From the sequence record LC494302.1: DNA of 64,000 nt. One strand, written 5' to 3'. Position numbers and translations under genes: made by a program. The notes beneath the pieces are model-generated. The model did not search any database. It worked only from the letters and a program-made list of their open reading frames with translations, and was not told the DNA's origin. How positions within the stretch are numbered: position 1 is the stretch's first letter; every line of letters starts with the position of its first letter. Positions 27,179 through 27,346 of the stretch are shown one piece after another.

Positions 27179-27346
27179 ATGAAAGATATTTTTACAATAG
27201 ATGCTAACGTTATATATGATTTTTATCTTACTGGTGGTGTAAAGGTAACGGGTACTGTGATTGATGTTTGTGATAATGGTATAATCTTAAGTGATGGCAC
27301 TAGAGTTGTCCAAACACACATCATTATGTTTGTCCCACATGTATAA
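27179..27346 (+). CDS. Hfq/Sm-fold-like small protein (55 aa, not in the ORF track)
   Basis: [55 protein letters not shown]; [11 protein letters not shown] aligns with Hfq IYLVNGIKLQG and [10 protein letters not shown] with VYKHAISTVVP. The SD is weak. Confidence 0.6.

What the first reader, a model, noticed from the sequence alone, without database searches (positions are those of the whole stretch)
27179..27346. Unlisted 55-aa Hfq/Sm-like ORF between nrdB and the next promoter
Seen: an ORF below the track cutoff fills the intergenic gap. It aligns with E. coli Hfq at Y25, L26, G29, K31, G34, I44-L46, H57 and P64 ([11 protein letters not shown] versus IYLVNGIKLQG; [10 protein letters not shown] versus VYKHAISTVVP). 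It lacks the N-terminal helix (QDPFL) and the YK of YKHAI. Established: Hfq hexamers chaperone sRNA-mRNA pairing, and the distal face uses Y25/I30. Inference: a phage Hfq mimic could bind A-rich RNA, form mixed rings that poison host Hfq, or serve phage sRNAs.
Basis: partly seen in the sequence, partly recalled or inferred. Interest (0 to 1): 0.65.

Follow-up and report, generated by a model that had tools for sequence, protein, structure and literature searches.

The report
Acidic Hfq-fold protein of jumbo phages
The 55-codon ORF after nrdB is a real, conserved gene of RaK2-like giant phages. Its protein is confidently predicted to fold like the bacterial RNA chaperone Hfq, but it is acidic and lacks Hfq's RNA-binding residues, so its role is unknown and probably differs from Hfq's.

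Summary
The window is Escherichia phage SP27 (Asteriusvirus, a RaK2-like jumbo phage). The ORF at 27179-27346 exists as described. It is already annotated (BBM61623.1 hypothetical; 121Q gp34 'membrane protein'; phrog_17251).

It is single-copy and sits in the same position (nrdA-nrdB-ORF-77 aa gene) in every RaK2-like genus checked, at 30-100% identity. dN/dS is 0-0.3 among the closer relatives (0.6 at the most distant), and an SD-like G-run is conserved. The TATAAT before the ATG is not conserved, so it is chance.

Two AlphaFold2 models (pLDDT 90.5 and 84) give a five-stranded barrel with no N-terminal helix. In both, every Foldseek PDB hit listed is Hfq (rmsd 0.8-2.0 A, 21-33% identity). VIA-align, which does not depend on Foldseek, also ranks Hfq first (Z 8.0-8.6). 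Profile-profile comparison with Hfq gives 72% probability, with 0 of 300 column shuffles reaching the score; Rof and T4 Frd.2 give under 0.3%.

The Pfam and NCBIfam Hfq models do not hit. The arginine rim, the YKH motif and distal Y25/K31 are not conserved. All 13 members are acidic (pI 4.1-4.8; the Hfq core is 9.7).

Verdict: a divergent, minimal Hfq-fold protein. The fold claim is supported; the 'Hfq mimic' function is not.

The parts
27141..27165 (+). Intrinsic-terminator-like hairpin (stem 27141-27159) plus T-tract directly after the nrdB stop
   Evidence: Found by the consensus scan: 8 pairs, against 0.2 expected in shuffles. A hairpin plus T-run is present at the same place in all 13 relatives, with different stem sequences.
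27168..27170 (+). SD-like GGG, 8 nt before the ATG
   Evidence: A GGAG/GGA/GGG/AGG element lies 6-11 nt upstream of the start in all 13 relatives.
27171..27176 (+). TATAAT hexamer; a chance match in the AT-rich SD-to-ATG spacer, not a promoter
   Evidence: It is not conserved. Relatives have tatattt, taagaat, atttat and similar at this place. No -35 partner was reported by the promoter scan.
27179..27346 (+). CDS of the 55-aa acidic Sm/Hfq-fold protein (EO157G_0340; 121Q gp34; phrog_17251)
   Evidence: ORF and annotation. Conservation. Selection. Fold.
27351..27380 (+). Sigma-70-like promoter with extended -10 (TTGGAA-18-TATAAT with TG) for the next gene; it bounds the ORF's transcription unit
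27409..27642 (+). Invariably adjacent 77-aa gene (phrog_16437) with an acidic N-half and a very basic C-half; context and possible partner, untested
26004..27128 (+). nrdB, the upstream gene whose read-through transcript probably carries the ORF (context)

Best explanation
SHOWN. The ORF is a genuine, single-copy, protein-coding core gene of RaK2-like jumbo phages (Asteriusvirus, Alcyoneusvirus, Eneladusvirus, Mimasvirus and unclassified relatives). It is always the first gene after nrdB. It sits behind a terminator-like hairpin and a conserved SD-like element, and ahead of the next gene's own promoter. Its product is predicted with high confidence to be a minimal five-stranded Sm barrel. The nearest solved structures are bacterial Hfq, and the Sm1 region has Hfq-specific profile similarity.

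INFERRED. It is a very divergent relative of Hfq that has lost the N-terminal helix, the arginine rim, the YKHAI Sm2 motif and the distal A-binding residues, and has become uniformly acidic. It therefore most likely does not act as an Hfq-type RNA-annealing chaperone.

The mechanism I think most likely is this. A small amount is made early or in the middle of infection, by read-through from the nrdAB transcript. The protein then acts through protein contacts. Its acidic Sm barrel, alone or as a small ring, docks on a basic nucleic-acid-binding surface. That is how the acidic Sm-like protein Rof blocks the RNA-binding site of Rho. The target is unknown. Candidates are a host RNA- or DNA-binding protein, or the bipolar, Lys-rich protein encoded by the next gene.
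For: Gene reality. It is annotated and matches phrog_17251 at E = 1e-31. tblastn finds it in 71 phage records from 9 host genera, at full length, with 33-100% identity. Synteny is identical in 13 genomes. SP27 against 121Q shows 5 synonymous and 0 non-synonymous changes; dN/dS is 0.11-0.30 against Ecwhy_1, Turkey5, A4, BF and Munch. The SD-like element and hairpin are conserved. There is one copy per genome.

Fold. The AF2 model has pLDDT 90.5; a 42%-identical member gives 84.0 with the same strand pattern. All Foldseek PDB hits listed, to about rank 48, are Hfq: TM 0.64-0.78, rmsd 0.8-2.0 A for all but one row (4v2s_F, 3.0 A over 65 columns), 17-33% identity. VIA-align over 48,161 chains puts Hfq in the top six or seven ranks, Z 7.7-8.6.

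Sequence. hhalign against 15 diverse Hfq gives probability 71.9% and score 27.7; 0 of 300 shuffles reach it. Each of the 15 Hfq sequences alone scores 17-24, against 8-11 for seven unrelated small T4 proteins and 9.8 for Rof.

Against chaperone function. All 13 members have pI 4.1-4.8 and net charge -3 to -7, while Hfq 1-65 has pI 9.7. The columns aligned to Y25, K31 and the rim are variable or non-basic.

Rof precedent. E. coli Rof has pI 4.63 and is an Sm-like homolog of Hfq that obstructs Rho's RNA-binding site (PMC11018626).
Against: No experiment or complex prediction supports any binding partner, and complex prediction never ran.

The family has no detectable sequence similarity to Rof, so the Rof analogy rests only on fold plus charge.

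Pore-loop positions keep Asn33 (N in 10 of 13 members, otherwise D) and His or Lys at position 47 in 10 of 13. A uridine-type pocket in a ring is therefore not excluded.

The fold is a prediction from shallow alignments (10-11 sequences). Foldseek E-values are only about 5e-3. VIA Z of about 8 is in the range where common small-barrel arrangements also score.

Transcription and translation were not shown. Contigs from RNA-labelled wastewater libraries cover the ORF but may derive from DNA.
Confidence: 0.5

Rival explanations
1. One reading: a phage Hfq analogue. It forms homo-oligomeric Sm rings that bind U- or A-rich single-stranded RNA and serve phage transcripts or sRNAs.
For: Hfq is the closest structure in both models. 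There is Sm1-motif profile similarity. Loop-3 Asn33 and loop-5 His/Lys47 are largely conserved and would line a ring pore. Canonical Hfq is almost absent from phage records: 7 of 50,697, and several of those look like bacterial contigs. A divergent version could fill that role.
Against: All members are acidic. There is no arginine rim, and Y25- and K31-equivalent positions are not conserved. No Pfam or NCBIfam Hfq/LSM model hits at E <= 10. Oligomerisation is untested.
Confidence: 0.2
2. A poison subunit or cap for host Hfq. The helix-less, acidic Sm barrel inserts into or docks on host Hfq hexamers and disables sRNA regulation during takeover.
For: The beta4/beta5 edge geometry is shared with Hfq (rmsd about 1 A). 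Opposite charge to the basic Hfq core would favour association. Every bacterial genus written as host in the records has Hfq; that is my background knowledge and was tested only in a phylum sample (41 of 61 genomes).
Against: The Hfq N-terminal helix, as I recall, contributes to the subunit interface, and it is missing here.
Confidence: 0.07
3. An assembly factor. It would be a phage-encoded counterpart of the host Hfq hexamer that T4 uses transiently as a second 'genome gate' under the gp13/gp14 neck.
For: PMC12929587 shows that T4 hijacks Hfq in this way. That Hfq chain (9lu5_T) is among the top VIA matches, Z 8.1 and 8.4. SP27 is a large myovirus with a highly pressurised head.
Against: In T4 the contact uses Hfq's positive face against a negative gp14 surface (PMC12929587, section 10), and this protein is acidic. 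The gene lies in a nucleotide-metabolism block, not a structural one. The T4 authors consider Hfq use specific to the T4 lineage.
Confidence: 0.05
4. A generic small beta-barrel that only converges on the Hfq shape and has an unrelated job, for example an accessory of the NrdAB reductase it always follows.
For: Small barrels are common, and VIA Z of 7-8 is also reached by SmAP, LSm, a BirA domain and designed SH3 barrels. BFVD holds many uncharacterised phage barrels. Linkage to nrdB is strict. HMM-to-sequence searches find no Hfq.
Against: The profile-profile signal is specific to Hfq and absent for Rof, Frd.2 and six other small T4 proteins. Foldseek 3Di+AA puts only Hfq at the top, with 21-33% identity. 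Only one Cys is present and it is not conserved, so this is not a YfaE-like ferredoxin.
Confidence: 0.15
5. A membrane protein, as RefSeq labels 121Q gp34 and PBECO4 gp470; or not a gene at all.
For: Only the annotation labels and the PHROG description.
Against: No 19-residue window exceeds Kyte-Doolittle 1.52 in any member. The models are confident soluble beta-barrels. Purifying selection and conservation down to 30% identity show that it is a gene.
Confidence: 0.03

Closest known systems
Bacterial Hfq (Pfam PF17209; e.g. E. coli Hfq, PDB 1HK9, 4PNO; A. aeolicus 5SZD)
   Same: The predicted five-stranded bent Sm barrel superposes at 0.8-2.0 A over 45-49 columns with 21-33% identity. There is Sm1-region profile similarity (G-x-K-h-x-G, h-h-L). 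The barrel ends in a V-P.
   Different: It is 55 aa, with no N-terminal helix, no R16/R17/R19 rim and no YKHAI motif. Y25 and K31 equivalents are variable. It is acidic (pI 4.7 against 9.7 for the Hfq core) and has no disordered C-terminal domain. It falls below every Hfq HMM threshold. The oligomeric state is unknown.
Rof / YaeO (acidic Sm-like inhibitor of termination factor Rho; PDB 6JIE; PMC11018626)
   Same: A small acidic Sm-like barrel (Rof pI 4.63). VIA Z is 6.8-6.9. It acts as a protein-binding decoy on an RNA-binding site, which is the mechanism proposed here by analogy.
   Different: There is no sequence or profile similarity (hhalign 0.2%). Rof is 84 aa. Binding to Rho was not tested for the phage protein.
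T4 GoF / MotB.1 / Frd.2 'LSm-like fold' early proteins (PMC12152347)
   Same: Phage-encoded small proteins of unknown function with predicted five-stranded LSm-like barrels and no N-terminal helix. T4 frd.2 also lies in a nucleotide-metabolism gene block.
   Different: There is no profile similarity to Frd.2 (0.3%). The T4 proteins are two-domain, 13-17 kDa, and cluster nearest FeoA-type SH3 domains rather than Hfq. They are a different PHROG.
[quoted passage not shown] 2009, cited in PMC3710371 and PMC12152347)
   Same: A precedent for a phage-derived Sm-fold protein that lacks the N-terminal helix.
   Different: It has a C-terminal helix and a solved pentamer. I did not compare it directly: no sequence was at hand, and it was not among the top 50 VIA rows.
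Host Hfq as transient neck 'genome gate' in T4 (PDB 9LU5; PMC12929587)
   Same: It links an Hfq ring to myovirus assembly. That Hfq chain is a top structural match.
   Different: There the protein is host-encoded and basic. Here it is phage-encoded and acidic, and nothing shows that it is in or on a virion.

Membership tests
Sm/LSm superfamily (fold level) | Five strongly bent antiparallel strands forming a small SH3-like barrel | tested here: met
   AF2 strands are 12-17, 21-31, 34-37, 42-44 and 48-53, with a 3-10 turn at 45-47; pLDDT 90.5. A second member gives the same pattern. The top PDB matches are all Sm-family proteins.
Sm/LSm superfamily (fold level) | N-terminal alpha-helix before beta1 | tested here: not met
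   Residues 1-11 are coil with pLDDT about 73. The helix is not obligatory: Sm-fold proteins without it are described in PMC12152347.
Sm/LSm superfamily (fold level) | Sm1 sequence motif | tested here: met
   hhalign aligns 29 columns (residues 12-40) to Hfq beta1-beta3 with probability 71.9%; 0 of 300 shuffles reach the score.
Sm/LSm superfamily (fold level) | Ring oligomer (5-8 subunits) through beta4-beta5' pairing | not testable with these tools
Hfq (PF17209 / NCBIfam Hfq) | Match to the curated family HMM | tested here: not met
   None of 13 members has a Pfam hit to Hfq or LSM at E <= 10. There is no six-frame hit of PF17209 in the 121Q genome, although the controls hit. There is no NCBIfam Hfq hit. 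phmmer over 1.84 billion proteins finds only 7 clusters, all of this family.
Hfq (PF17209 / NCBIfam Hfq) | Sm2 motif [YF]KHAI with proximal-pore K56/H57 and Q8/F42 | tested here: not met
   The family column pattern is [QT]-x-[HKMS]-[IV]. H or K occurs at position 47 in 10 of 13 members. There is no Y-K, and the F42 equivalent is Asn/Asp33.
Hfq (PF17209 / NCBIfam Hfq) | Basic rim (R16, R17, R19) needed for RNA annealing | tested here: not met
   The segment before beta1 has no conserved basic residue. All members have net charge -3 to -7.
Hfq (PF17209 / NCBIfam Hfq) | Distal-face A-binding residues Y25, I30, K31 | tested here: not met
   The Y16 column reads Y/V/T/I/E/F/H and the K22 column reads K/E/Q/T/V/N across 13 members.
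Hfq (PF17209 / NCBIfam Hfq) | Hfq as nearest structural neighbour | tested here: met
Rof/YaeO | Sequence relationship to Rof | tested here: not met
   hhalign probability 0.2%, score 9.8.
Rof/YaeO | Acidic Sm-like barrel that binds Rho | tested here: inconclusive
   Charge is similar, pI 4.7 against 4.63, and VIA Z is 6.8-6.9. Rho binding was not testable.
T4 GoF/MotB.1/Frd.2 LSm-like family | Profile similarity and two-domain architecture | tested here: not met
   Against Frd.2, hhalign probability is 0.3%. This is a single 55-aa domain. GoF and MotB.1 themselves were not compared.
Membrane protein (RefSeq/PHROG label) | A transmembrane helix | tested here: not met
   The maximum 19-residue Kyte-Doolittle mean is 0.37-1.52 across 13 members, and the model is an all-beta soluble barrel.

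The most novel reading that the evidence does not exclude
RaK2-like jumbo phages carry their own stripped-down, charge-inverted Hfq that engages the host's Hfq-centred machinery. It would either co-assemble with or cap host Hfq hexamers to shut down sRNA regulation, or replace host Hfq as the transient ring that seals the portal-neck during head completion, a role just discovered for host Hfq in T4.
Probability: 0.1. Interest if true: 0.8.

Novelty: new variant of a known kind. Interest (0 to 1): 0.5.

Why it matters
Hfq is the central hub of small-RNA regulation in the hosts of these phages, and canonical hfq genes are almost absent from phage genomes.

This is a core gene of a whole jumbo-phage clade, and it keeps the Hfq barrel while inverting its charge and dropping its RNA-binding residues. 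That makes it a natural experiment on what an Sm barrel can do without RNA-binding surfaces.

It also gives a small, easily expressed candidate for a phage factor that targets host RNA-binding machinery. Hfq and Rho are two candidates.

In addition, it corrects a propagated 'membrane protein' annotation and assigns a fold to phrog_17251. In the searched literature no paper links Hfq to these phages.

Tried and rejected
It never ran, so there is no verdict on rings or on mixed rings with Hfq.

I did not resend those rows and used only the window protein plus proteins P0001-P0010.

(4) The search for related loci in IMG/VR: the single protein found only 121Q, and the alignment was too divergent for patterns.

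(5) The profile against PDB sequences gave only sub-threshold hits: Hfq E = 0.58, Edc3 LSm 0.77, IF-1 0.62.

(6) The ESM Atlas gave no informative named cluster. PADLOC gave nothing.

(7) Reads: contigs of two RNA-labelled wastewater libraries cover 27202-27447 and 27203-27353 with 0-3 mismatches. They cannot show strand, ends or transcription and may be DNA carry-over, so I do not count them as evidence of expression.

(8) A YfaE-like ferredoxin downstream of nrdB was rejected: there is one Cys and it is not conserved.

(9) The TATAAT as a promoter was rejected: it is not conserved, and a start 7 nt downstream would remove the ATG.

(10) The window's own assembly is not held. 121Q (G001) was used for whole-genome checks.

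Full report
WHERE WE ARE. The region 26000-29000 is 100% identical to Escherichia phage SP27 (LC494302.1, Asteriusvirus PBECO4), and window coordinates equal record coordinates. SP27 belongs to the RaK2-like jumbo myoviruses, with genomes of about 350 kb.

THE OBSERVATION. The ORF at 27179-27346 (+) is as described: ATG to TAA, 55 aa. GenBank annotates it as EO157G_0340 (hypothetical protein). RefSeq calls the identical proteins of 121Q (gp34) and PBECO4 (gp470) 'membrane protein'. It matches phrog_17251 end to end at E = 1e-31.

IT IS A REAL GENE.
- tblastn finds it at full length in 71 phage records with hosts in Escherichia, Klebsiella, Salmonella, Erwinia, Yersinia, Serratia, Pectobacterium, Cronobacter and Xanthomonas, at 33-100% identity.
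- In 13 genomes from all RaK2-like genera the order is nrdA - nrdB - ORF - 77-aa gene, followed by the MazG-like pyrophosphohydrolase. A virion structural gene lies in between in 11 of the 13.
- There is one copy per genome.
- SP27 against 121Q differs by 5 synonymous and 0 non-synonymous changes. dN/dS is 0.11 against Ecwhy_1 and 0.2-0.3 against Turkey5, A4, BF and Munch.
- In a library of 1.84 billion cluster representatives, phmmer finds only 7 clusters, all of this family. The family is confined to this phage clade.

EXPRESSION SIGNALS.
- Right after the nrdB stop there is a terminator-like hairpin plus T-tract (27141-27165). A hairpin with a different stem sequence is present at the same place in all 13 relatives.
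- It is followed at once by GGAG, GGA or GGG, 6-11 nt before the start codon.
- The SP27 TATAAT (27171-27176) lies in the SD-to-ATG spacer and is not conserved, so I read it as chance.
- The next gene has its own sigma-70-like promoter with an extended -10 at 27351-27380.
- The ORF is therefore most simply the last cistron of the nrdAB unit, reached by read-through. That is inference.
- Contigs of two RNA-labelled wastewater libraries cover the ORF, but they cannot prove transcription.

FOLD.
The strands are 12-17, 21-31, 34-37, 42-44 and 48-53, with a 3-10 turn before the last strand and no N-terminal helix.
- A member only 42% identical gives the same pattern at pLDDT 84.
- Foldseek against 350,542 PDB chains lists only Hfq, to about rank 48, for both models. 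TM (normalised by query length) is 0.64-0.78, rmsd 0.8-2.0 A over 45-49 columns for all but one row (4v2s_F, 3.0 A over 65 columns), and identity 17-33% (21-33% apart from a Thermotoga homologue). E is about 5e-3, which is as low as a 55-aa query gets.
- VIA-align, which does not use Foldseek, ranks Hfq chains first among 48,161 representatives (Z 8.0-8.6 and 7.7-8.4). Archaeal SmAP and eukaryotic LSm/Sm follow at Z 6-8. By the tool's own caution, Z of about 8 is not decisive alone.

SEQUENCE-LEVEL HOMOLOGY. HMM-to-sequence methods see nothing.
- There is no Pfam or NCBIfam Hfq/LSM hit for any of 13 members at E <= 10.
- PF17209 has no six-frame hit in the 121Q genome, while the control genomes ring.
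- The family profile against PDB sequences puts Hfq and the Edc3 LSm domain among the best nine, but only at E of about 0.6-0.8.

Profile-profile comparison is positive and specific.
- Against a narrow gammaproteobacterial Hfq alignment: 47.8%.
- Against 15 Hfq cores sampled across a phylum (loci): 71.9%, score 27.7, with 29 columns over beta1-beta3.
- 300 column-shuffled family alignments gave mean 9.9, sd 2.2 and max 17.4, and none reached the real score. The reversed alignment scores 8.7.
- Each single Hfq scores 17-24. Seven unrelated small T4 proteins score 8-11, T4 Frd.2 scores 11.4 and E. coli Rof 9.8.

I conclude that remote homology to Hfq is likely but not proven.

WHAT IT LACKS. In the 13-member alignment the invariant or near-invariant residues are F5, Y13, G25 (=Hfq G34), G34 and I48. 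The D-N-G turn at 32-34, F51 and P53 are strongly conserved. The functional residues of Hfq are not kept:
- Y16 (=Y25) and K22 (=K31) vary freely.
- The segment before beta1 has no Arg patch.
- The YKHAI motif is reduced to H or K at position 47 (10 of 13 members) followed by I/V.
- Every member is acidic: pI 4.14-4.81, net charge -3 to -7. Several have acidic C-terminal tails. Hfq 1-65 has pI 9.7.
- No 19-residue window reaches transmembrane hydrophobicity, so the 'membrane protein' label is unsupported.

MECHANISM. Shown: a conserved, selected gene, a confident Sm/Hfq-type barrel prediction, and an acidic surface composition. Inferred: because the rim, the distal face and the basic charge that define Hfq's chaperone activity are missing, an Hfq-like RNA-annealing role is unlikely.

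The closest functional precedent for an acidic Sm barrel is Rof. It is described as an Hfq homolog that obstructs the primary RNA-binding site of Rho (PMC11018626). E. coli Rof has pI 4.63. I therefore favour a protein-binding, decoy-type action on a basic nucleic-acid-binding surface, with the target unknown. One candidate is the invariably adjacent 77-aa protein, whose C-terminal half carries +12 to +15 net charge in all 13 phages.

An RNA-binding ring remains possible, because pore-loop Asn33 and His/Lys47 are largely kept. Ring formation and mixed rings with host Hfq could not be tested: complex prediction never ran.

CONTEXT IN THE LITERATURE.
- Phage-encoded Sm-like folds have precedents. 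[quoted passage not shown] Those are larger, two-domain and nearest to FeoA-type SH3 domains, and AF3 gave no confident multimers for them.
- T4 was recently shown to hijack host Hfq as a transient second 'genome gate' under the gp13/gp14 neck (PMC12929587). That Hfq chain is among the top structural matches here. This suggests a speculative assembly role, but the charge complementarity described there argues against it.
- Canonical Hfq is found in only 7 of 50,697 phage records, and several of those are evidently bacterial contigs.
- No paper in the searched library links Hfq to RaK2-like phages.

VERDICT. The 'Sm/Hfq-like' reading is supported at the level of fold and probable remote homology. 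The 'Hfq mimic that binds A-rich RNA or poisons Hfq' reading is not supported by residue conservation or charge, and it remains untested. This is a new, charge-inverted, helix-less variant of a known kind: moderately interesting, cheap to test, and a correction of a propagated annotation.

Noticed in passing
window 27409-27642 (+), promoter 27351-27380: The 77-aa gene that always follows the ORF (phrog_16437) is strongly bipolar in all 13 phages checked. Its N-half has net charge -4 to -9 and its C-half +12 to +15, with a Lys/Arg-rich tail. It has its own sigma-70-like promoter with extended -10. It could be a nucleic-acid binder or the partner of the acidic Sm-like protein.
   Followed up: partly
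L007, L008, L011, L012, L015, L016 (about 40-815 in locus coordinates; 603-1340 in L011): An ORF of about 232-258 aa (GAP32_299, annotated 'endonuclease') sits between nrdA and nrdB in CBB, GAP32, XbC2, Ecwhy_1 and EJP2. It splits nrdB into two CDSs in Yersinia phage fHe-Yen9-04. It is absent in SP27, 121Q and RaK2. This looks like a mobile homing-endonuclease insertion.
   Followed up: no
L010 and L016 versus window 27653-28048: The 'virion structural protein' gene between the 77-aa gene and the MazG-like pyrophosphohydrolase is missing in Erwinia phage Hallingskeid and Escherichia phage EJP2.
   Followed up: no
window 27141-27165 and the same place in L005-L016: The hairpin after nrdB is kept in all 13 genomes with quite different stem sequences (for example AGGGATTC, GGACGC, GGAGGC, CAGTAC). 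The structure rather than the sequence is conserved, and the next gene's SD follows immediately after the T-tract.
   Followed up: partly
window 28815-29475 (-): Two overlapping minus-strand ORFs (28815-29294, 159 aa; 29158-29475, 105 aa) lie where GenBank annotates two shorter CDSs. I did not examine it.
   Followed up: no
phage collection, hits H91-H97: Of the 7 'phage' records with a canonical Hfq, two are 500-kb Salmonella contigs, two are 49-kb 'Acinetobacter phage MD-2021a' contigs with 85%-identical hfq, and one is a 63-kb human-gut phage contig with a 47%-identical Hfq. The last could be a genuine phage-borne hfq.
   Followed up: no
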